Shown one piece after another: positions 286 through 62,804 of a stretch of 64,000 nt of DNA. The DNA is taken from IMG/VR virus record IMGVR_UViG_3300042887_005053, positions 62,001 through 126,000 of that record; one strand, written 5' to 3'. A program made the translations under genes and the position numbers. Each line of letters opens with the position of its first letter. Positions within the stretch are counted from its first letter, which is position 1. The notes under the pieces are model-generated. The model did no database searches. It was not told where the DNA came from and saw only the letters and a list, made by a program, of their open reading frames with translations.

Positions 286-3030
286 TTAATATTCGTTCTC
301 AAAGATAATTCTTTCACCAGTTGATTTCATCTCTGGTCCTAATTCGATTTCAACTCCGAACTTATGTGTTGAGAATACTGGTTCTTTAAGTGCCCATCCT
401 TTTAGTTTAGATTCTGGAAATATAAAATCCTTTAATTTCAAGTCTCCAAGAATTACCTGAGTCGCTATTTTAATATAAGGTATTTCATTTGCCTTCGAAA
501 TAAATGGAACTGTTCGAGAAGAACGAGGGTTCGCCTCTATTACCCATAGATTATTTTCCTTTACAACAAATTGTATATTAATAAGACCTTTAATTCCTAA
601 ACTAATACTAATCAGTTTAGACCATTCTTTAATTCTATTTAGTATTGTATTATCTAAGTTTTTGGTCGGAAGATAAGAGTATGAATCACCAGAATGAACT
701 CCTGCTCTGTCAACATGTTCCATTATTCCAATAATATGTATATCATCTCCATCACAAATTAAATCAACTTCAGCTTCGATAGCATTTTCTATAAACTGAT
801 CAATAATAATCGTATTATTAGGAAAAAATTCAATCAACTCTTCACATTGTGTGAGTAATTCTTCTTGTGTATTTATGATTTTCATTCTTTGTCCACCAAT
901 TACATAAGACGGTCTTATCAAGACCGGAAATTCAAAGTTAATATTATTGATTTCCTCAATTTTATTTATGACATGATACTTAGGATAAAGTATGTTGTGT
1001 TTATCTAATATCGAATAGAACCTATCTCTATCTTCTGCCATATCAATACCTTCAAAAGAAGTTCCAAGTATATTAACACCTAACTTATCTAATTCACCTG
1101 CTAGTTTCAGTGCAGTCTGTCCACCTAATTGAACTACAACACCGTATGGTTTTTCAAGTCTAACTATGTCTAAAACATGTTCAAGCGTAACTGGCTCAAA
1201 GTATAACTTGTCTGGTAGATTAAAGTCAGTAGATACTGTTTCTGGATTATTGTTAATCATAATTGTTTCCCAACCTGATTCTTTAGCTGAAAGAACTCCA
1301 TGTACACATGCATAATCAAATTCAATACCTTGACCAATTCTGTTTGGTCCAGATCCTAAGAATATTACTTTCTTTTTATTGTTTGTAGAGTGACTTTCAT
1401 TTTGTGAAGTTAATGAAGAAATAGGTCTCTCAAAGGTTGAATAGTAGTAAGGCGTTTGTGCTTTGAATTCAGCTGAACAAGTGTCAATACTTTTATAAAT
1501 TCTGTTGATTTTCCAACTTTGTCTCATAGAATAAATATCCACTTCTGATACACCAGTTATTTTAGAAATTTGTTCATCACTAAATCCGTTTTGTTTAGCA
1601 ACAAGTAGTGACTCTTTATTAATTTTTCTTTTTAATTCAATTTCAATTTTACAAATAAGCTCAATTTGTTCTAACAACCACATATCTATACCAGTAACCT
1701 TTTGTATTGATTCAAGTGAAATACCTTTTTCAATTGCTGATTTTACTTGATAAATTCTCTTTGGTGTTGGGTTAGATAATTCTTCTAAGTTTTTAAAGTC
1801 TATCGAAATTAGTCCACATTTTGATTCTTCAAGACCTTGGATGGCTTTTTGAAGAGCTTCGGTGAGTGATCTACCAATAGCCATTGACTCACCAACACTT
1901 CTCATTTGAAGACCTAATGTTGAATTGGATTTAGGAAATTTCTCAAAATTCCACTTTGGTACTTTTACAACTACATAGTCTAAACTTGGTTCAAACATTG
2001 CTGATTTACCAACAATTGGATTTGATATTTCATCTAAATTATAACCAATAGCTAATTTAGCAGATATTCTTGCGATTGTATAACCAGTTGCTTTTGAGGC
2101 AAGTGCTGATGATCTTGATACTCTTGGATTTACTTCAACTGCAATAATTTCTTCTGATTGAGGTTCAACTGCGAACTGAACATTACATCCACCTGCGAAT
2201 TTACCTAAATTTCTCATCATCATAATTGACATGTCTCTCATTCTTTGAAAGGTAGTATCAGAAAGAGTCATTGCCGGAGCTATTGTAATTGAGTCACCAG
2301 TGTGAACACCCATTGGATCAAAGTTCTCAATAGTGCAGACAATAGTAACATTATCATTATTATCTTTAAGTAGTTCAAGTTCATATTCTTTCCAACCAAG
2401 AACTGCTTTTTCTACTAATACCTGAGATGTTGGAGAAGCGTCTAATCCTTTTGTAACAACTGATTCAAATTCTGATTCAGTTTTAGCAAAACCACCACCA
2501 AATCCACCCAAGGTGAAACTTGGTCTAACTACAAGTGGAAATCCTAATTTCTTAGAAGCTATAGTGGCCTCTTCTAATGTGTTTACCGCAATCGATTCTG
2601 AGATTCCGATATTTAATCTTTTCATAAACTTTCTGAATTCATCTCTGTTCTCAGTGAGTTCAATTGTATTAAGATCAACTCCGATTATTTTACAATCGTA
2701 TTTCTCCCAGATTCCGAGTTCGTCACAATCTTTACATAGATTAAGTGCTGTTTGACCACCCATAGTTGGTAGAACAGAATCTATGTTATGTGTTTCTAGT
2801 ATTTTGATTATACTATCAGGAGTTAGAGGCCACATATAAACTTTATCAGCAGTTTGTGGATCTGTCATAATAGTTGCGGGATTGTCATTAATAAGAATGA
2901 CTTCGATGCCCTCTTCTTTAAGAGATTTTGAAGCTTGAGTTCCTGAGTAATCAAATTCACAAGCTTGGCCGATTACGATAGGTCCGGATCCGATAATTAA
3001 TACTGAGCTGATAGAGTTGTTTCTTGGCAT
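286..3030 (-). CDS. carB: Carbamoyl-phosphate synthase large subunit (lacks C-terminal MGS/allosteric domain)
   Basis: IGSGPIVIGQACEFDYSG, GVHTGDS, EVNPRVSRSSALASKATG, GSGPNRIGQGIEFDY; ends shortly after LGPEMKSTGE. Confidence 0.97.
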   Translation of the reverse strand: MPRNNSISSVLIIGSGPIVIGQACEFDYSGTQASKSLKEEGIEVILINDNPATIMTDPQTADKVYMWPLTPDSIIKILETHNIDSVLPTMGGQTALNLCKDCDELGIWEKYDCKIIGVDLNTIELTENRDEFRKFMKRLNIGISESIAVNTLEEATIASKKLGFPLVVRPSFTLGGFGGGFAKTESEFESVVTKGLDASPTSQVLVEKAVLGWKEYELELLKDNNDNVTIVCTIENFDPMGVHTGDSITIAPAMTLSDTTFQRMRDMSIMMMRNLGKFAGGCNVQFAVEPQSEEIIAVEVNPRVSRSSALASKATGYTIARISAKLAIGYNLDEISNPIVGKSAMFEPSLDYVVVKVPKWNFEKFPKSNSTLGLQMRSVGESMAIGRSLTEALQKAIQGLEESKCGLISIDFKNLEELSNPTPKRIYQVKSAIEKGISLESIQKVTGIDMWLLEQIELICKIEIELKRKINKESLLVAKQNGFSDEQISKITGVSEVDIYSMRQSWKINRIYKSIDTCSAEFKAQTPYYYSTFERPISSLTSQNESHSTNNKKKVIFLGSGPNRIGQGIEFDYACVHGVLSAKESGWETIMINNNPETVSTDFNLPDKLYFEPVTLEHVLDIVRLEKPYGVVVQLGGQTALKLAGELDKLGVNILGTSFEGIDMAEDRDRFYSILDKHNILYPKYHVINKIEEINNINFEFPVLIRPSYVIGGQRMKIINTQEELLTQCEELIEFFPNNTIIIDQFIENAIEAEVDLICDGDDIHIIGIMEHVDRAGVHSGDSYSYLPTKNLDNTILNRIKEWSKLISISLGIKGLINIQFVVKENNLWVIEANPRSSRTVPFISKANEIPYIKIATQVILGDLKLKDFIFPESKLKGWALKEPVFSTHKFGVEIELGPEMKSTGERIIFENEY

Positions 3031-4097
3031 AATTTAATTTCTTTAATAAATTTTTCAAATAGATATTTTGAATCGTTTGGACCTGGTCCTGCTTCTGGAT
3101 GATATTGAACTGAAAATACTGGTAGGTTTTTCATTTTAATACCCATAACAGTTTGATCATTTAAGTGTTCGTGTGTTATTTCTAAATTTGGATTATTTAG
3201 TATCTGTTCTCTAACGAGACAGAATCCATGATTTTGTGAGGTTATTTCACACTTACCGGTTTCTAAGTTCTTAACTGGATGATTACAACCACGATGTCCA
3301 TAGAACATCTTATAAGTATCTATGTTGTTGACTATACCAATTAATTGATGACCCATACAGATTCCGAAAACTGGCTTTTTAAGATTAATTATCTTTTTAA
3401 TAAGCTGAACCATCTCAGGCATTGCTTGTGGATCACCTGGACCATTAGATATAAAAAAACCATCAACTTTATAAGATTTGATGGTTTCGAAATCCGTTGT
3501 TGACGGAAAAATAACTAAGTTGGTATCGAACTGAAGTAAATTCTTTATAATAGATGATTTGATACCTAAATCAATAATACCAATTTTATTCTTACCAGTT
3601 CCAATTTCTTGTATTTTACTACTTGTTACTTTACTGTGAAGATTTTGACCAGTCATTTTAGGATGTTCAGATAATCTTTTTTTCAATTCAGATAATTCTA
3701 ATATCTCAGATGAAATAATACAGTTTTGAGCACCAAACTCTCTAACATGATTTACAAGTGCTCTAGTATCTATATCACTTATACCAACCGTATCTTCTAA
3801 ATATTTTTGTAGAGATGTCGCGTTGTTTCTAGAATAGTTTTGTGAGAAGTTTCGACAGATTACACCAGAAACTTGAACTTTGTCAGACTCAATATCATCT
3901 GAATTTGATCCATAATTCCCAAGATGTGAATTAGTGAGAATTACGATTTGGCCAAAATAAGATGGATCTGAAAAAATTTCTTGATAACCGGTCATTCCGG
4001 TATTGAAACAAATTTCACCAAGTGTGGTGCCGATTTTCCCGAAAGACTTTCCTTCAAAAACACTTCCGTCTTCAAGAAGTAGTATGCATTTAGGCAT
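2997..4097 (-). CDS. carA: Carbamoyl-phosphate synthase small subunit
   Basis: FNTGMTGYQE, SNGPGDP, FGICMGHQ (catalytic Cys), SVQYHPE. Confidence 0.97.
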   Translation of the reverse strand: MPKCILLLEDGSVFEGKSFGKIGTTLGEICFNTGMTGYQEIFSDPSYFGQIVILTNSHLGNYGSNSDDIESDKVQVSGVICRNFSQNYSRNNATSLQKYLEDTVGISDIDTRALVNHVREFGAQNCIISSEILELSELKKRLSEHPKMTGQNLHSKVTSSKIQEIGTGKNKIGIIDLGIKSSIIKNLLQFDTNLVIFPSTTDFETIKSYKVDGFFISNGPGDPQAMPEMVQLIKKIINLKKPVFGICMGHQLIGIVNNIDTYKMFYGHRGCNHPVKNLETGKCEITSQNHGFCLVREQILNNPNLEITHEHLNDQTVMGIKMKNLPVFSVQYHPEAGPGPNDSKYLFEKFIKEIKLCQETTLSAQY

Positions 4098-57586: not shown

Positions 57587-57847
57587 TTGTATTTATATAT
57601 ACCAGAAATAATCTTGTTTAAGAGAATGGATATTAAATTTGAAATCGAAAAGGCTCAAAAAATTGAAATTCTCAATGATAATGATTTACAAAGTGTAAAA
57701 GAATTATACTTTTCTAAGGATGGTATTTTACCAAAAATTTATAATTTTGCTACTACGAAAAAAGGAGAAGAGTCTTCACTTATTTTATCGGATTTAAATA
57801 AAATCAGAAGTATAATTACCAAAAAAATAAGTGATTATACTAGCTAA
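57587..57847 (+). CDS. Hypothetical protein
   Basis: ORF track; true start may be the internal MDIKFE. Confidence 0.4.
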   Translation: MYLYIPEIILFKRMDIKFEIEKAQKIEILNDNDLQSVKELYFSKDGILPKIYNFATTKKGEESSLILSDLNKIRSIITKKISDYTS

Positions 57848-59000
57848 TAACACTAACTACTTCAGGATAATACTCACAAGCTTCTGGATTTTTGCCTTCA
57901 TAGTTAATAACTGATAATGCATATCTCATGGCATTTAATCTACCAATTCTTTTATCGTTTGAATTGATTATTGTCCAAGGAGCTTTTTTAGTTGATGTTT
58001 TTTCAAACATCTGATTTTTGTACATTGTAATAATATTCCACTTTCCGATTACTTTTTCATCGTTTGGTGAAAACTTCCAGAATTTAATAGGTGATGTTTT
58101 TCTTAATTCAAATCTTTGAATTTGTTTTTCTTGTGTTATAGAAAACCAAAACTTAATTAAAGTAATTCCTTGATTAACTAATCCAGCTTCCCACTTATTA
58201 ACATTTTCCATGAAATCTCTATACTGTTCTTCAGTACAATATCCCATAGCTGGTTCAACTACAGCTCTGTTATACCAAGAACGATCAAAGAAAACAATTT
58301 CACCAGGTTTAGGTAATTCTTTTTCGTATCTCGCAAACCAATTATTCTTTTCTTCTTCAGTTGGCATTCCAAGAGCAACAATTCTGAATATTCTTGGATT
58401 CAAAACTTCTGTGAATCTTTTTATAGTAGAACCTTTACCAGCTGAATCTCTACCTTCAAAAACTATTGCAATTCTTTGATTTGTATTTTTAACCCATTCT
58501 TGTAGTTTAACTAGTTCAATTTGAATTTGGTATTTTTCATCTTCGTATTGTCTTCTTGTTAGAATAGATTTTTCACCTTCCATTCTGTCAATGTGTTCTT
58601 CTTCTGGTGATAAACCTTCAGCTTTTTCAATGTATTCATCAACTCTATCGATTAATGACTCATAGTAGATTTCGAATTCTGCTGAAATCATTTTTTTGGT
58701 CCTTTTTCCTTTTAAATCGAGTAGTTGGTGTATTTTTCTTAAAAAAGTTTCTGTATTAAAAAAAGTAACTATTTCTTTAGTGAATTCTTTTTCTAGTTCA
58801 CTTAAAATCATTTCAATATCGATATTGTCAAAATCTTTATAGATTACTTCGCCTTTTTCTGTAGAAATATTTTCTAATATAAAATCACGATAAGTGTTCA
58901 ATCTCATCACAAATTGATTTTCGATATCTTGAAGTTCTTCTACTGGTAGTTCGAATTCTAATTCTTCGTTTAGAAATGTATTAAATGGTTTGAGTTTCAT
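57840..59000 (-). CDS. ppk2: Polyphosphate kinase 2 with N-terminal extension
   Basis: FEGRDSAGKGSTIKR, FDRSWYNRA, IKFWFSI, WKFSP.D, APW...S.DK. Confidence 0.93.
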   Translation of the reverse strand: MKLKPFNTFLNEELEFELPVEELQDIENQFVMRLNTYRDFILENISTEKGEVIYKDFDNIDIEMILSELEKEFTKEIVTFFNTETFLRKIHQLLDLKGKRTKKMISAEFEIYYESLIDRVDEYIEKAEGLSPEEEHIDRMEGEKSILTRRQYEDEKYQIQIELVKLQEWVKNTNQRIAIVFEGRDSAGKGSTIKRFTEVLNPRIFRIVALGMPTEEEKNNWFARYEKELPKPGEIVFFDRSWYNRAVVEPAMGYCTEEQYRDFMENVNKWEAGLVNQGITLIKFWFSITQEKQIQRFELRKTSPIKFWKFSPNDEKVIGKWNIITMYKNQMFEKTSTKKAPWTIINSNDKRIGRLNAMRYALSVINYEGKNPEACEYYPEVVSVIS

Positions 59001-59011
59001 ATAATTATATA

Positions 59012-59914
59012 TTAAATTTTTGAGTCAAATATATAAACATCAAAAGTAGTATTACCTTTGACTTTTTTAATCTTTTTAAGTACATCGCCTGATATTGAAT
59101 CCAAAACTTTAAATACTCCAATATTCGTTCCTTTTTCATCTAATATCTTAACTGTATTTCCTGGTTGACCGAGTGCACCAAGCATTGCTACATATTTGTT
59201 TCCATAAATACTTTTTAAGAAAGAAACTCTAATATTTGCAACATCCTTAATATTATTTACATAAGGATTGTCTAATGGATTATTTAAATCTAAGATTGTA
59301 TCAGTTGCTTTAGCTTTAACTGTGACGAATTTTCTGGTTTCTTCTCCTAAGGTTATATCTTCTTTATTTTGAATTTCTTGTGATTTAATTAAAGCTTGTT
59401 GATTTTTTCTTATTTCGTTAAAATCAGCTCTTGCTAAAATTCCACCTCTCATTCCTTTGTCATTCATATTATATCCTGATGGTGGAAGTCTATAGAAAGA
59501 ACCTGTAAATGTAACTGATAAAAGTCTATCGAATCTAAATAGCCTCCAAATTTTATTAATATGTCTATTTCCTGATACAGACCATCCATTTAAGTGGTAT
59601 CCTCTTATTAAAAATTTCCCTTTAGATGATTTACCGATAACCATTGGATAAATCACTCTTTCTGATCCCATAAATCTTTTATCTTTTTCCCCTTTATAAT
59701 TGATAAGAAAAACCATTCCATATTTAATAGCCTTCATAATGAGTTCTTGTGTGGGTTTTAGTGGCTCATTAACTGGTATATCCGCTATATTTTTAATATT
59801 TTTTAATTGAAATCTAGGAACATAGGAATTATCCTCTTTTAGGTTATAATTCTCTTTAATTACAAACTCAATTGGCTTGGTGTTAAAATAATTTTTTACT
59901 TGACTTATGTTCAT
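59012..59914 (-). CDS. WYL-domain-like protein
   Basis: INY...ERVIYP...LIRGY...WRLFRFDRL. Confidence 0.6.
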   Translation of the reverse strand: MNISQVKNYFNTKPIEFVIKENYNLKEDNSYVPRFQLKNIKNIADIPVNEPLKPTQELIMKAIKYGMVFLINYKGEKDKRFMGSERVIYPMVIGKSSKGKFLIRGYHLNGWSVSGNRHINKIWRLFRFDRLLSVTFTGSFYRLPPSGYNMNDKGMRGGILARADFNEIRKNQQALIKSQEIQNKEDITLGEETRKFVTVKAKATDTILDLNNPLDNPYVNNIKDVANIRVSFLKSIYGNKYVAMLGALGQPGNTVKILDEKGTNIGVFKVLDSISGDVLKKIKKVKGNTTFDVYIFDSKI

Positions 59915-60842
59915 TATATTTAAATATCTTTTTAGATTTTATAAGTGAAAGTAAATTATTGATTTTCACATTTTTATTATCATGTATTACGTGAAGAATA
60001 TTTTTATATATTTTGTTATCTTTTTCACTTTTTATTTCTTTATCCATTAGTATCAAATATTGTCCAAAATTATTTTCAATTTTTGATTGAAAATAATCAA
60101 TTTTTGGATGAGATTTATATCTCCATAGATATCCTGCAGTTTGAAACCTTTCTCCCATACAAACTTGATTTATTTTAGATAGACTAATTTTATTATACAT
60201 TGATGCTTCTGTTAAGGATTTATATTCTGTTTGATTATTTAAATAATCAATTCTTGTAACAGGATACTGTTTTTTGTTTCTTATTCTTTCTTCAAATTTA
60301 TCTTCTTTATATAAAAATATAAATTTATTTTTCCATATTTTTATATCACCATTGCATATTTGACTAATAGTCTGTGGATGAGTATTATTCATCTCACCAG
60401 CCTCCTTTACTGATTTGTATTCTTCTATAAAATTACCATCTATATCATATTTAACCACTGGTCTATTTAACTTTTCTATGTAATCATTTTTGTGTTTATA
60501 TCCAATAAAAGTTTCACCACCCTTGGTATAATTTGTTAAAGGACCTGTTTTATCCACAATTCTACCTATTTCTCTTATTAGTTTTATTTCTATTTCTATA
60601 GCCTCTTCATTTGTGAGGTTATTTTGGATTTTTCTTATAATTGGTTCTATTCCTGCCTTTTGTATTTTTAATATCTTATTATTCTTTAGTGGATTCCATT
60701 CTTTAATTTTAAGATGTCTGAGATATCTTGATTTTTTGCCTTTACCAATATAAAATGGTTCATATTCTAATTTGTATCCATCATAGTTATATTGTCCTGG
60801 TTTTCTTGGATCCATATAGACATAGATATAATATTCATTCAT
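59883..60842 (-). CDS. GIY-YIG homing endonuclease with NUMOD1 repeats
   Basis: YYIYVY.DP...FYIGKG..R..H, E..LI...G...LTN; two YKS..EA...I.Q.C.G modules. Confidence 0.8.
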   Translation of the reverse strand: MNEYYIYVYMDPRKPGQYNYDGYKLEYEPFYIGKGKKSRYLRHLKIKEWNPLKNNKILKIQKAGIEPIIRKIQNNLTNEEAIEIEIKLIREIGRIVDKTGPLTNYTKGGETFIGYKHKNDYIEKLNRPVVKYDIDGNFIEEYKSVKEAGEMNNTHPQTISQICNGDIKIWKNKFIFLYKEDKFEERIRNKKQYPVTRIDYLNNQTEYKSLTEASMYNKISLSKINQVCMGERFQTAGYLWRYKSHPKIDYFQSKIENNFGQYLILMDKEIKSEKDNKIYKNILHVIHDNKNVKINNLLSLIKSKKIFKYNEHKSSKKLF

Positions 60843-60867
60843 AAAACTATATATTAAAAGTAAAGGT

Positions 60868-60967
60868 CACAAAGTGATTATCTTTTTCACCTTTGTAATT
60901 GATAGGAAAAACCATTCTATACATGATGGCTTTAGTTATAAAAATCTCTAACTTGTTTGATATTCAT
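60868..60967 (-). pseudogene. Decayed duplicate of the 5' end of the WYL-like gene
   Basis: MNIKQVRDFYN, then frameshifted KAIMYRMVFPINYKGEKDNHF, versus MNISQVKNYFN and KAIKYGMVFLINYKGEKDKRF. Confidence 0.8.
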
Positions 60968-60985
60968 ACTTAGAGTATATATAAA

Positions 60986-61017
60986 AAAAGTCAGACACAT
61001 TTCTGAATCTGACTTTT
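60986..61017 (-). terminator. Intrinsic terminator
   Basis: AAAAGTCAGA...TCTGACTTTT with T-tract on the minus strand. Confidence 0.7.
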
Positions 61018-61076
61018 AATTGAGCCCAACTGGATCTACCGGTTGTCCACCAATCTATTTTAAGTAAATAGATAAA

Positions 61077-61622
61077 CTATTTCTTTCTAAAAATTCTTAA
61101 ATATGTATCACTATCATTCCAGACAGAAAGTGGTTTTTTACTTGGTTCTATTTCTTCGTAAGTCTCAAAAGACATATTCTTTACATATTCGGCACCAACA
61201 TTTACTGGTTGAAAATCACAGTCATCAATAAATATTATACCATTTTGAATCATGAACTTTTGACAAAGTTCCCAATCATTAACAACTGCTTCTGGTGTAT
61301 GTAATCCATCGATAAATGTAAACGCTAATTTTAAATCAAAAACTGAATCTAAAAATTCTCTTGCTTCAAAGCTTTCTGATCCGGTTCTACAATGAAATAC
61401 ATTATCTAAGTGTTTAGTGTTATTGATGAAGATGTCATATTTGCTTGGTACACCTTGTTGTCTACCATCCCATGGATCAATTACAAAAACTCTCTTAAAG
61501 AATCTAGATAAATATTGGGTTGTTAATCCATCTAAAGCGCCAATCTCCAAACAGTCTAATTCGCTAAAAGTATCAAAGTATTTGTCTGACCACCTGACAG
61601 TATGTTCTGTAGTTTCAATCAT
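61077..61622 (-). CDS. Class I SAM-dependent methyltransferase (Methyltransf_24-like)
   Basis: LEIGALDG, FIDGLH, GIIFIDD. Confidence 0.8.
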   Translation of the reverse strand: MIETTEHTVRWSDKYFDTFSELDCLEIGALDGLTTQYLSRFFKRVFVIDPWDGRQQGVPSKYDIFINNTKHLDNVFHCRTGSESFEAREFLDSVFDLKLAFTFIDGLHTPEAVVNDWELCQKFMIQNGIIFIDDCDFQPVNVGAEYVKNMSFETYEEIEPSKKPLSVWNDSDTYLRIFRKK

Positions 61623-61679
61623 ATTAAAGTATTTTTTATTTTTATATTAAAAAAATTTATAGAGTTTAATATATAATGA

Positions 61680-61985
61680 ATGAAAATAATTAAAAAATTT
61701 GAAGCTTGGGCAGGATATCCAATACCGACTACTTCATTAGACAATGAATTAGAATACAAAAAGTGTAAAGATTGTGATTCGGTTTATCAAGTTTATAAGC
61801 CTAAGTCAATAAATTGTAAATATTGTGGATCAAAAGATTTATTAATGTTGAGTGAAGATGAGTTTTACAATGAACTAAAAAATAATATAGATCCAAAAGA
61901 GTACGAACTAGCTCTAAAACACAGAAGCAAGATCGCTAATACATTTATTGATTTATCTAAAGAAGAAGATGATTTTATTAATTAA
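61680..61985 (+). CDS. Zinc-ribbon protein
   Basis: CKDC...CKYCGS; leader MKIIKKFE. Confidence 0.65.
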   Translation: MKIIKKFEAWAGYPIPTTSLDNELEYKKCKDCDSVYQVYKPKSINCKYCGSKDLLMLSEDEFYNELKNNIDPKEYELALKHRSKIANTFIDLSKEEDDFIN

Positions 61986-61996
61986 TATATACAAAT

Positions 61997-62671: not shown

Positions 62672-62804
62672 TTGGTTGGTCTTTCCTGTTATTTATTCAA
62701 CATCATGATATCTTCTACTATTATTTTTTGTGTTTTAATCTGTTCCTTTTTTTTTTAATCGGAGTTTTAAATTTTAATATATACTTTTAAAATTAATAGT
62801 ATTT

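What the first reader, a model, noticed from the sequence alone, without database searches (positions are those of the whole stretch)
59670..60980. Footprint of a GIY-YIG invasion: decayed old gene start upstream, replacement start downstream
Seen: 60868-60967 encodes MNIKQVRDFYN and then, after a deletion and frameshift, KAIMYRMVFPINYKGEKDNHF. This matches the start and roughly residues 61-81 of the intact 59012..59914 gene, with clear nucleotide similarity (ttatctttttcacctttgtaattgataggaaaaaccatt versus ttatctttttcccctttataattgataagaaaaaccatt). The remnant keeps its own TATATA element. Inference: the endonuclease inserted into the WYL-like gene while bringing a diverged, cleavage-resistant 5' replacement, which places the likely target near GEKD.
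Basis: partly seen in the sequence, partly recalled or inferred. Interest (0 to 1): 0.65.

Follow-up and report, generated by a model that had tools for sequence, protein, structure and literature searches.

The report
Homing endonuclease invasion scar in phage
A selfish DNA-cutting gene entered a giant lake-water phage next to a conserved gene, bringing a foreign copy of that gene's first ~270 bases and leaving the original start behind as a decaying stub; this is a known kind of event, caught here with unusually complete before-and-after evidence.

Summary
On the minus strand the order is: native terminator and promoter; a stub of the old gene start (old nt 1-31 and 178-244); a 319-aa free-standing GIY-YIG/NUMOD endonuclease; and an intact 300-aa gene with a WYL-like fold.

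Close endonuclease-free relatives (L037, L038, L039) have one gene, no duplication, and a 5' end that matches the stub: 0/142 and 6/67 mismatches. The gene now in use is a chimera. Its nt 1-~267 are foreign: 67/303 mismatches to L037, but 0/104 to a different endonuclease-bearing phage, L040. Its nt ~291-903 are native (19/600). Breakpoint p = 1e-29.

The upstream junction sits in a 4-nt microhomology (TTTG) and is followed by 27 nt of donor promoter spacer. This fits one-sided, illegitimate repair of a break inside the gene. The likely cut lies at old nt ~237-291 (codons 79-97), just after GEKD.

The stub has since decayed: a 146-nt deletion, a frameshift and stop, and changes at invariant residues. 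In more than 10 other lineages the endonuclease sits cleanly at the gene's start codon with no stub.

Verdict: a new member of a known kind (Seg-like intronless homing). Cleavage itself is untested.

The parts
59012..59914 (-). Intact 300-aa target gene, a chimera. The donor-type 5' tract covers nt 1-~267 (window 59914-59648). The switch interval is nt 267-291 (59648-59624). The recipient-type 3' part runs to 59012. Residues 52-156 have a WYL-like fold.
   Evidence: Mismatch profiles against L037-L040. Informative-site breakpoint between nt 267 and 291, Fisher p = 1e-29. At protein level, the N-part is identical to P0132 and the C-part is identical to P0124/P0127/P0128. Fold search gives Z = 6.2-8.7 to PafBC, BrxR, CapW and DriD.
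59660..59678 (-). Densest cluster of differences between the endonuclease-linked allele and the endonuclease-free allele, at gene nt 237-255 (K-R-F-M-G-S versus N-H-F-A-G-H). This is the candidate core of the recognition or cleavage site.
   Evidence: 12/19 positions differ from L037, 0/19 from L040 (endonuclease-bearing) and 1/19 from L039. The cluster straddles old nt 244, where the stub ends.
59883..60842 (-). Free-standing homing endonuclease gene of 319 aa. It has an N-terminal GIY-YIG domain, a NUMOD1 module and an I-HmuI-like NUMOD DNA-binding module. It overlaps the target's first 32 nt.
   Evidence: Pfam PF22945 E = 2e-7, above its cut-off; PF07453 E = 1.2e-4; PF22083 weak. The A1 profile matches the I-HmuI C-terminal domain (1u3e) at E = 1.2e-6 and GIY-YIG chains. 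Invariant residues Y5/Y7/Y9, Y31, G33, R39, H43 and N104, with E85 at 90% or more, across 37 orthologues.
60843..60869 (-). 27 nt of donor DNA brought in with the endonuclease. It contains the gene-start/promoter-like motif TTAATATATA at 60857-60848.
   Evidence: 25/27 identical to the native spacer between the terminator T-run and the start codon in the endonuclease-free relative L203. The motif occurs 18 times in the window against 1.1 expected, always just upstream of start codons.
60870..60873 (-). Left (illegitimate) junction: a TTTG microhomology shared by the recipient gene (old nt 241-244) and the donor spacer.
   Evidence: Three-way comparison of the window, L037 and L203.
60870..60936 (-). 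Stub segment B, equal to old gene nt 178-244 (ITKAI..EKDNHF). It is decayed, with K64M, G66R and L70P.
   Evidence: 6/67 mismatches to L037 and L038, against 16/67 to the window's own intact copy. G66 and L70 are invariant in 33 homologues. L70P is absent from L031.
60937..60967 (-). Stub segment A, equal to old gene nt 1-31 (MNIKQVRDFYN). A 146-nt deletion of old nt 32-177 joins it to segment B and creates a frameshift and a TAA stop at 60934-60932.
   Evidence: 0/31 mismatches to L037, L038 and L039, against 9/31 to the intact copy. The deletion ends lie at a short ACTAAA repeat.
60968..61078 (-). Native upstream region of the old gene: a terminator-like hairpin with T-run at 61017-60983 and TATATATAC at 60983-60975.
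   Evidence: Together with segment A, 142 nt with 0 mismatches to L037. Fold energy -14.4 kcal/mol, z = -3.2. The 311-aa gene calls P0123 and P0128 read through this same sequence in endonuclease-free relatives.

Best explanation
This is the scar of a homing event by a free-standing, Seg-like GIY-YIG endonuclease gene in a huge freshwater phage.

Normal arrangement. The endonuclease gene sits between the promoter motif and the start codon of a conserved WYL-like gene. It uses that gene's promoter and ATG, and it re-creates the gene's start at its own 3' end.

Inferred mechanism. The enzyme cuts endonuclease-free alleles of the neighbouring gene about 240-290 nt into the coding sequence. Repair from a co-infecting endonuclease-bearing genome then copies the endonuclease gene together with the donor's uncut 5' gene segment (co-conversion).

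What happened in the window's lineage. The recipient was an L037-like genome.
- The right side of the break was repaired by homology. The donor-to-recipient switch lies at nt 267-291.
- The left broken end, which ended at old nt 244, was joined illegitimately through a 4-nt TTTG microhomology to donor DNA 27 nt upstream of the endonuclease's ATG.
- The old promoter and old nt 1-244 therefore stayed upstream as a useless duplicate.
- That duplicate later lost 146 nt, acquired a frameshift and a stop, and gained substitutions at invariant residues.

Shown versus inferred.
- Shown: the anatomy, the chimera, the recipient type, the junctions, the decay, and the presence/absence polymorphism.
- Inferred: that the enzyme is active, where it cuts, and that the linked allele is resistant.
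For: 1. Presence/absence at one site. Three endonuclease-free relatives about 97% identical in the flanks have a single gene and no duplication.
2. The stub is the old 5' end. It shows 0/142 and 6/67 mismatches to L037, against 9/31 and 16/67 to the in-use copy.
3. The in-use gene is a chimera.
   - Against L037: 67/303 mismatches in the 5' part and 19/600 in the 3' part (Fisher p = 8e-19).
   - Against L040, which is 20% divergent in the 3' part: 0/104 mismatches at the 5' end, and its endonuclease 3' end is 96% identical.
   - Breakpoint between nt 267 and 291, p = 1e-29.
4. The left junction lies in a TTTG microhomology. The next 27 nt match a native promoter spacer of another lineage at 25/27.
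5. L031 carries the endonuclease and the stub, and its upstream DNA is 98.9% identical to L037. This fixes the recipient type.
6. The endonuclease lies directly upstream of this gene in every lineage read, more than 10 in all. The other 11 endonuclease-bearing loci with upstream DNA have no stub.
7. The endonuclease moves horizontally. Its divergence is uncorrelated with that of the target's 3' part (r = -0.12). L043 and L127 have identical target C-terminal proteins but endonucleases only 46% identical, plus a divergent nt 1-150 tract.
8. The catalytic and DNA-binding modules are intact.
9. The endonuclease-free NHFAGHE allele co-occurs with the endonuclease-bearing form in one lake sample.
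10. Precedents: one-sided illegitimate double-strand-break repair at microhomologies, and distant cleavage sites of free-standing endonucleases (PMC2988022).
Against: - No cleavage data exist. The enzyme's activity, its site and the resistance of the linked allele are all inferred.
- The KRFMGSE allele also occurs in endonuclease-free phages (L009, L039, L203). It is therefore a natural allele of another clade, not demonstrably an evolved immunity allele.
- The exact donor was not found. L040 matches perfectly only over nt 1-104, with 10-17% divergence over nt 105-236 and 256-303.
- An illegitimate crossover not started by the endonuclease would give the same structure.
- Across more distant endonuclease-bearing lineages there is no single discriminating substitution at the proposed site.
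Confidence: 0.8

Rival explanations
1. The same structure arose from an illegitimate (unequal) crossover between an endonuclease-free and an endonuclease-bearing genome, and that crossover was not started by the endonuclease's own cut. The position of the junction would then say nothing about the cleavage site.
For: A microhomology junction is expected from any illegitimate recombination. No cleavage data exist.
Against: The junction at old nt 244 falls inside the densest allele-difference cluster, nt 237-255 with 12/19 positions differing. It also lies only 23-47 nt from the homologous right-hand switch at nt 267-291. The same right-hand boundary recurs in the endonuclease-free mosaic L039. 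This coincidence is what a break at that spot would produce.
Confidence: 0.12
2. Reverse polarity: the in-use 5' end and the endonuclease are native, and the stub with its promoter is a fragment of L037-like DNA imported upstream, for example together with the methyltransferase cassette.
For: Genes further upstream in the window (ORF101, ORF224) are only about 75% identical to L037. A mosaic boundary lies at 61078/61079.
Against: L031 has the same endonuclease and stub but lacks the methyltransferase cassette, and it is L037-like (98.9%) upstream as well. The backbone is therefore L037-like on both sides and the foreign block is the endonuclease plus nt 1-~267. The 3.6 kb downstream is 97-98% identical to L037.
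Confidence: 0.04
3. The 5' end duplicated in tandem in place, the two copies then diverged, and the endonuclease inserted between them, with no foreign DNA involved.
For: None beyond the duplication itself.
Against: The stub is identical or near-identical to endonuclease-free relatives. The in-use copy is 22% different from them, yet 0/104 different from another phage species. In-place divergence cannot give that pattern. No endonuclease-free relative has a duplication.
Confidence: 0.02
4. The structure is an assembly chimera or a collapsed strain mixture.
For: Endonuclease-bearing and endonuclease-free alleles co-occur in the same samples, which can confuse assemblers.
Against: The structure is identical in four independent assemblies from different samples and pipelines. 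Single contigs in further runs span the stub-to-endonuclease junction and the endonuclease-to-gene junction with 0 differences (records 6, 15, 20, 28).
Confidence: 0.01

Closest known systems
Free-standing GIY-YIG 'Seg' endonucleases of T4-like phages (intronless homing; SegF/gene 56, SegG/gene 32), as reviewed in PMC2988022
   Same: - A free-standing GIY-YIG catalytic domain with C-terminal NUMOD-type DNA-binding modules.
- It sits between genes, is transcribed with its neighbours, and its ORF overlaps the neighbour.
- The target is the adjacent gene, with a cleavage site expected hundreds of bp from the insertion point.
- It is inherited together with co-converted flanking markers, giving mosaic genes.
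   Different: - There is no close sequence relationship beyond the shared domains.
- It sits exactly on the neighbour's start codon and takes over its promoter motif and ATG.
- The hosts are uncultivated ~0.6-Mb lake phages, and the target is a WYL-like gene of unknown function.
- Activity is untested.
- A stub of the old gene start is retained.
One-sided, illegitimate double-strand-break repair during T4 td intron homing (Parker, Belisle and Belfort 1999, as summarised in PMC2988022)
   Same: Homologous repair on one side of the break and a microhomology junction on the other. This lets the mobile element enter where one flank is not used for homology.
   Different: That was an engineered experimental system with an intron-encoded enzyme. 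Here it is a natural event, fixed in a wild phage population, involving a free-standing gene.
Mobile endonuclease ORFs (mORFs) of fungal mitochondria that create hybrid genes (Allomyces macrogynus atp6; Glomus atp6, atp9, cox2 and nad3; PMC3630166)
   Same: The endonuclease gene arrives with a foreign copy of one end of the host gene, which is then used. The native end remains beside it as a duplicate, and that duplicate is closer to endonuclease-free relatives than the in-use copy is.
   Different: - This is the mirror image: the 5' end is replaced rather than the 3' end.
- The endonuclease is a separate ORF, not an in-frame fusion.
- The setting is a phage rather than an organelle.
- Those cases mostly involve LAGLIDADG enzymes.
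Nuclease genes at boundaries of genetic exchange in ICP1 vibriophages (PMC10448857)
   Same: Homing-endonuclease genes mark the edges of mosaic blocks between closely related phages.
   Different: The nuclease families differ (T5orf172, HNH). No retained stub of the replaced gene end was found by my term search of that paper.

Membership tests
GIY-YIG homing endonuclease (free-standing, Seg-like) | GIY-YIG catalytic domain detectable by a curated model | tested here: met
   PF22945 E = 2e-7, 31.5 bits against a cut-off of 27, residues 5-108. The A1 profile matches GIY-YIG chain 9u75 at E = 6.7e-5.
GIY-YIG homing endonuclease (free-standing, Seg-like) | Conserved catalytic residues: the Tyr residues of the GIY and YIG motifs, plus Arg, His, Glu and Asn | tested here: met
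   Y5/Y7/Y9, Y31, G33, R39, H43 and N104 are invariant and E85 is conserved at 90% or more in 37 orthologues, and all are present in the window's protein. Their equivalence to I-TevI residues rests on my own knowledge, not on a structural superposition.
GIY-YIG homing endonuclease (free-standing, Seg-like) | Separate C-terminal DNA-binding module (NUMOD / helix-turn-helix) | tested here: met
   NUMOD1 E = 1.2e-4, 22.6 bits against a cut-off of 22.8, so just under threshold. The I-HmuI NUMOD-like hit is weak. The A1 profile matches the I-HmuI C-terminal domain 1u3e at E = 1.2e-6.
GIY-YIG homing endonuclease (free-standing, Seg-like) | Presence/absence polymorphism at one fixed site among close relatives | tested here: met
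   The window and L029-L031 carry the endonuclease; L037-L039 and L202 lack it, with about 97% identical flanks. L018 carries it; L017 and L019 lack it.
GIY-YIG homing endonuclease (free-standing, Seg-like) | Co-conversion of flanking markers and horizontal movement relative to the host backbone | tested here: met
   Chimeric target with breakpoint p = 1e-29. The endonuclease is 96% and gene nt 1-104 are 100% identical to L040, against 80% elsewhere. No correlation between endonuclease and target divergence, plus the L043/L127 pair.
GIY-YIG homing endonuclease (free-standing, Seg-like) | Site-specific cleavage of the endonuclease-free allele, with immunity of the endonuclease-bearing allele | not testable with these tools
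   Only an indirect bracket is available (old nt 237-291), from the junction, the substitution cluster and the breakpoint.
WYL domain protein (the target gene) | Match to Pfam WYL (PF13280) at the curated threshold | tested here: not met
   The window's protein has no hit at E <= 10. 13 of 33 homologues give sub-threshold WYL hits, best E = 0.026.
WYL domain protein (the target gene) | Sm/SH3-like beta-barrel fold of WYL domains | tested here: met
   AlphaFold2 model with mean pLDDT 69.8. Residues 52-156 give the top ten VIA-align hits, all WYL-domain proteins: PafBC Z = 8.7 with rmsd 2.0 over 83 residues, then BrxR, CapW, DriD and 6oaw. Foldseek ranks the same set first, at E = 3e-3 to 5e-2. 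These Z values are moderate by the tool's own calibration.
WYL domain protein (the target gene) | N-terminal winged-helix DNA-binding domain typical of WYL regulators | tested here: inconclusive
   Residues 1-50 are modelled at low confidence (pLDDT 28-54) and no HTH family was hit.
Mitochondrial mORF-type hybrid gene | The endonuclease ORF is flanked by an in-use foreign gene end and a native duplicate end that is closer to endonuclease-free relatives | tested here: met
   Mismatches to L037 are 0/31 and 6/67 for the stub, against 9/31 and 16/67 for the in-use copy. Here this concerns the 5' end rather than the 3' end.
Mitochondrial mORF-type hybrid gene | The endonuclease ORF is fused in frame with the host gene | tested here: not met
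   The endonuclease is a separate ORF with its own ATG and stop. It overlaps the target's start by 32 nt in another frame.

The most novel reading that the evidence does not exclude
The duplicate is more than a scar. The direct repeat (old 5' end and new 5' end) flanking the endonuclease may give a built-in route for precise loss of the endonuclease. Such loss would leave a chimeric, probably cleavage-immune, endonuclease-free allele. L039/P0123 has exactly that structure: recipient-type nt 1-~162, then donor-type up to the same nt 267-291 boundary. The later 146-nt deletion inside the stub would then lock the endonuclease in. If so, this population shows invasion, immunising loss and stabilisation, all in natural lake samples.
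Probability: 0.2. Interest if true: 0.6.

Novelty: new member of a known kind. Interest (0 to 1): 0.45.

Why it matters
- **A natural record of a homing event.** This is a base-resolved record of a free-standing homing endonuclease entering a new genome by one-sided repair. That route has been shown mainly in engineered T4 systems. Here the recipient type, donor-type relatives, both junctions and later decay are all recoverable from public metagenomes.
- **A testable prediction.** For an uncultivated phage enzyme, it predicts a target within about 55 nt of a conserved WYL-like gene, with a sensitive allele (L037-type) and a presumed resistant allele (window-type).
- **A recombination hot spot.** The first ~300 nt of this widespread huge-phage gene exchange frequently and are tied to the endonuclease. 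This matters for anyone using the gene for phylogeny or strain tracking.
- **No new principle.** The case does not reveal a new kind of system.

Tried and rejected
- **Protein searches on the target.** Pfam and PHROGs gave nothing at E <= 0.01. A PDB sequence-profile search gave only noise. The protein atlas returned only unnamed viral clusters.
- **Finding endonuclease relatives.** A single-sequence pattern search in IMG/VR found nothing. It worked only with an alignment.
- **Terminator scan.** The consensus scan missed the hairpin because its loop is too long. Folding it directly showed it.
- **Weak upstream match in L021/L025.** This match (73% over 74 nt, opposite strand, E = 4e-4) lies inside the coding region of the ORF224 homologue. 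I judged it to be chance.
- **Small ORFs upstream of the target in L203, L204 and L032.** I suspected these were remnants. They are lipoprotein-like peptides unrelated to the gene or the endonuclease.
- **L018 against L017/L019.** This comparison was meant to locate the target site independently. The pair is too divergent (about 19% throughout) to show a tract.
- **Discriminating residues across all lineages.** No residue at codons 79-92 universally separates endonuclease-bearing from endonuclease-free genes. Several endonuclease-bearing lineages do carry odd changes in the otherwise invariant ERVIYPMV motif (L018 P to G, L032 Y to M, L036 M to L, L043/L127 V to T). Others do not, so this is only suggestive.
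- **CTTTG motif.** A CTTTG motif ends at old nt 244 and is lost in the linked allele. It resembles the I-TevI CNNNG cleavage motif as I recall it. The motif is too short to count as evidence.
- **L202.** It is too divergent for a clean donor/recipient profile.
- **Laid contigs.** The joint in run X3 (59607 to 60872, side 23) is compatible with an endonuclease-free contig but falls below the tool's own reliability guide.
Full report
**Observation**

All features are on the minus strand.
- 60967-60935 reads MNIKQVRDFYN and then TAA.
- One base out of frame, 60933-60871 reads KAIMYRMVFPINYKGEKDNHF.
- These correspond to residues 1-11 and 61-81 of the intact 300-aa gene at 59012-59914.
- The quoted 39-mers are at 60878-60916 and 59679-59717 and differ at 3 positions.

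The similarity is far beyond chance.
- blastn against the gene's own locus gives 44 nt at 91%, E = 9e-11.
- The stub is the only second match to the gene in the 204-kb contig.
- None of 23 relatives shows such a self-match.

**Context**

- The window is part of a 204-kb IMG/VR contig judged about 35% complete.
- Its nearest database phages are uncultured ~635-735-kb genomes.
- The same DNA occurs in lake and freshwater metagenomes from 13 studies.
- Gene order on the minus strand: a Methyltransf_24 gene (61077-61622), a hairpin with T-run (61017-60983), TATATATAC (60983-60975), the stub, the endonuclease (59883-60842), the target gene, then PPK2 (57840-59000).

**The endonuclease**

- The 319-aa protein has a GIY-YIG domain above Pfam's cut-off, a NUMOD1 module just under the cut-off, and an I-HmuI-like NUMOD module.
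- A profile of 37 orthologues matches the I-HmuI C-terminal DNA-binding domain at E = 1.2e-6, and also matches GIY-YIG chains.
- The tyrosines, Arg39, His43, Glu85 and Asn104 are conserved.
- More than 50 full-length orthologues at 43-66% identity exist.
- It is a single copy in this contig.

**Canonical arrangement in relatives**

- In every lineage where DNA could be read, the orthologue lies directly upstream of the same ~300-aa gene and overlaps its start by about 20-32 nt. These lineages are L018, L032, L036, L040, L043, L044, L122, L124 and L127.
- L018 (with endonuclease) was compared with its endonuclease-free sisters L017 and L019. The left homology runs through the promoter-like motif and the ATGAA of the start codon. 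The right homology restarts 11 nt before the target's ATG.
- The endonuclease therefore takes over the gene's start codon and upstream motif, and re-creates the gene's start at its own 3' end.
- That motif, TTAATATATA, occurs 18 times in the window against 1.1 expected, each time just upstream of a start codon.
- Of 12 endonuclease-bearing loci with upstream DNA, only the window has a stub.

**The decisive comparison**

A word search with the target protein found about 1960 relatives. The closest ones (P0124-P0129, 93% identical) begin with exactly the stub's peptide. They continue with ITKAI...EKDNHF, as in the stub's second piece, and are 99-100% identical to the window's protein from residue 102 on.

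Their contigs (L037, L038) and that of P0123 (L039) keep the window's gene order but have no endonuclease, no methyltransferase and no duplication.

At nucleotide level:
- Window 61078-60937 equals L037 from -110 to +31 of the gene: 142 nt, 0 mismatches.
- Window 60936-60870 equals L037 nt 178-244: 67 nt, 6 mismatches.
- The window's own intact copy differs from the stub at 9/31 and 16/67 positions.

The stub is therefore the old 5' end of this lineage's gene.

**The in-use gene is a chimera**

| Comparison | Segment | Mismatches |
|---|---|---|
| Window vs L037 (no endonuclease) | nt 1-303 | 67 |
| Window vs L037 | nt 304-903 | 19 (Fisher p = 8e-19) |
| Window vs L040 (endonuclease-bearing, about 80% identical elsewhere) | nt 1-104 | 0 |
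| Window vs L040 | last 298 nt of the endonuclease | 12 |
| Window vs L040 | nt 304-903 | 121 |

Using sites where L037 and L040 differ, the window switches from donor type to recipient type between nt 267 and 291 (55:10 against 5:109, p = 1e-29). The exact donor was not found. Over nt 105-303 the window is closest to L039, not to L040.

**Left junction**

- The stub's homology to L037 ends at old nt 244 (window 60870).
- The following 27 nt up to the endonuclease's ATG match, at 25/27, the native spacer between the terminator T-run and the start codon in the endonuclease-free relative L203.
- Recipient and donor share TTTG at the join.
- This is a microhomology junction. [quoted passage not shown]

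**Order of events**

- L031 comes from another sample. It has the endonuclease and the stub with the same 146-nt deletion, but it lacks the methyltransferase cassette.
- Upstream, L031 is 98.9% identical to L037. The recipient was therefore L037-like.
- The cassette (61079-61662), together with the divergent ORF101/ORF224 region (about 75% identical to L037), came later.

**Decay of the stub**

- It lacks old nt 32-177. The 146-nt deletion has ends at a short ACTAAA repeat, and it shifts the frame and creates TAA.
- It carries K64M, G66R and L70P. G66 and L70 are invariant in 33 homologues.
- L70P is absent from L031, so decay is continuing.

**Where the enzyme probably cuts (inference)**

Three indications converge on old nt ~237-291, that is codons 79-97, which begin one codon after GEKD.
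1. The left junction lies at nt 244.
2. The densest allele differences lie at nt 237-255: 12/19 differ from L037, while the two endonuclease-linked alleles are identical there.
3. The right-hand switch lies at nt 267-291. It is shared by the endonuclease-free mosaic L039, whose donor tract begins at nt 162-174.

A distance of about 250 nt from the endonuclease's own position fits what is known of free-standing endonucleases (PMC2988022).

L039 can be explained in two ways, and I cannot separate them. It may be a co-conversion tract that stopped short of the endonuclease. Alternatively, it may result from loss of the endonuclease by recombination between the then-complete stub and the new copy.

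Caveat: the KRFMGSE allele also occurs naturally in endonuclease-free clades (L009, L203). Its resistance is assumed only because endonuclease-bearing genomes must tolerate their own enzyme.

**Independent support for mobility**

- Across 8 endonuclease-bearing lineages, endonuclease divergence does not track divergence of the target's 3' part (r = -0.12).
- L043 and L127 have identical target C-terminal proteins but endonucleases only 46% identical. Their target genes differ at 43/150 positions in nt 1-150 and 35/753 afterwards.
- In run X6 a contig end reads the NHFAGHE (endonuclease-free) allele beside contigs of the endonuclease-bearing form. Both therefore occur in one lake sample.

**The target gene**

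- It has no family at curated thresholds.
- An AlphaFold2 model (mean pLDDT 69.8) shows a beta-barrel at residues 52-156. Its ten best structural matches are all WYL-domain proteins (Z = 6.2-8.7), and Foldseek ranks the same set first.
- 13 of 33 homologues give sub-threshold Pfam WYL hits.
- 'WYL-like' is therefore fair as a description of the fold. The gene's function is unknown.
- The proposed cut site lies in the first strands of that barrel.

**Comparison with known systems and verdict**

- It works like T4 Seg-type intronless homing with co-conversion.
- Its entry route matches one-sided illegitimate repair.
- It mirrors the mitochondrial mORF hybrid genes, in which a foreign gene end is used and the native end persists (PMC3630166).
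- My literature searches found no phage example with a retained stub of the replaced 5' end. That search was limited.
- I rate it a new member of a known kind. It is well documented and moderately interesting, and its main value is a sharp, testable target-site prediction.

Noticed in passing
window 61079-61662 (minus strand; methyltransferase ORF 61077-61622): A Methyltransf_24 gene cassette is itself a polymorphic insertion. It is present in the window, L029 and L030. It is absent from L031 (which has the endonuclease) and from the endonuclease-free relatives L037-L039, where about 29 nt stand in its place. It marks a mosaic boundary: DNA upstream of it (ORF101, ORF224) is only about 75% identical to L037, against 97-98% downstream.
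   Followed up: partly
window, 18 sites, for example 59006-59015, 60848-60857, 61666-61675, 61982-61991, 62774-62783: TTAATATATA occurs 18 times against 1.1 expected and lies a few to about 20 nt upstream of start codons on the coding strand. It is probably this phage group's promoter or gene-start motif. Its closeness to the ATG suggests very short or absent leaders.
   Followed up: partly
window 59883-59914: The endonuclease ORF overlaps the target's first 32 nt. Its conserved C-terminal residues encode the A/T-rich stretch just before the target's ATG, so the endonuclease carries the neighbour's start context inside its own coding sequence. This is comparable to promoters embedded in T4 seg genes.
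   Followed up: partly
L043 and L127 (IMG/VR and JGI contigs), endonuclease at 2501-3440, target from about 3421: Two phages have identical target C-terminal proteins, and their upstream DNA is 95% identical up to about 100 nt into the endonuclease. Yet their endonucleases are only 46% identical and the first 150 nt of the target are 29% divergent. This is a second, independent endonuclease-linked replacement block.
   Followed up: partly
L032 1-553 (minus strand): A second, different GIY-YIG/NUMOD endonuclease gene (PF01541) lies about 2.4 kb upstream of the studied endonuclease in the P0002 contig. Endonuclease genes cluster in this neighbourhood.
   Followed up: no
L203 1705-1869, L204 1738-1893, L032 2739-2915: Small ORFs of 51-58 aa with a lipoprotein-like signal (…ASC) and Thr/Ser/Asp-rich repeats sit between the ORF101 homologue and the target or endonuclease in several relatives. 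They are absent from the window.
   Followed up: partly
window 57840-59000 (minus strand): A polyphosphate kinase 2 gene (PF03976, E = 3e-78) follows the target gene. It keeps this position in many but not all relatives.
   Followed up: no
L025 4001-4780: One relative's target gene is shorter (260 aa called, match length 780 nt), which suggests an internal deletion in an otherwise L021-like gene.
   Followed up: no
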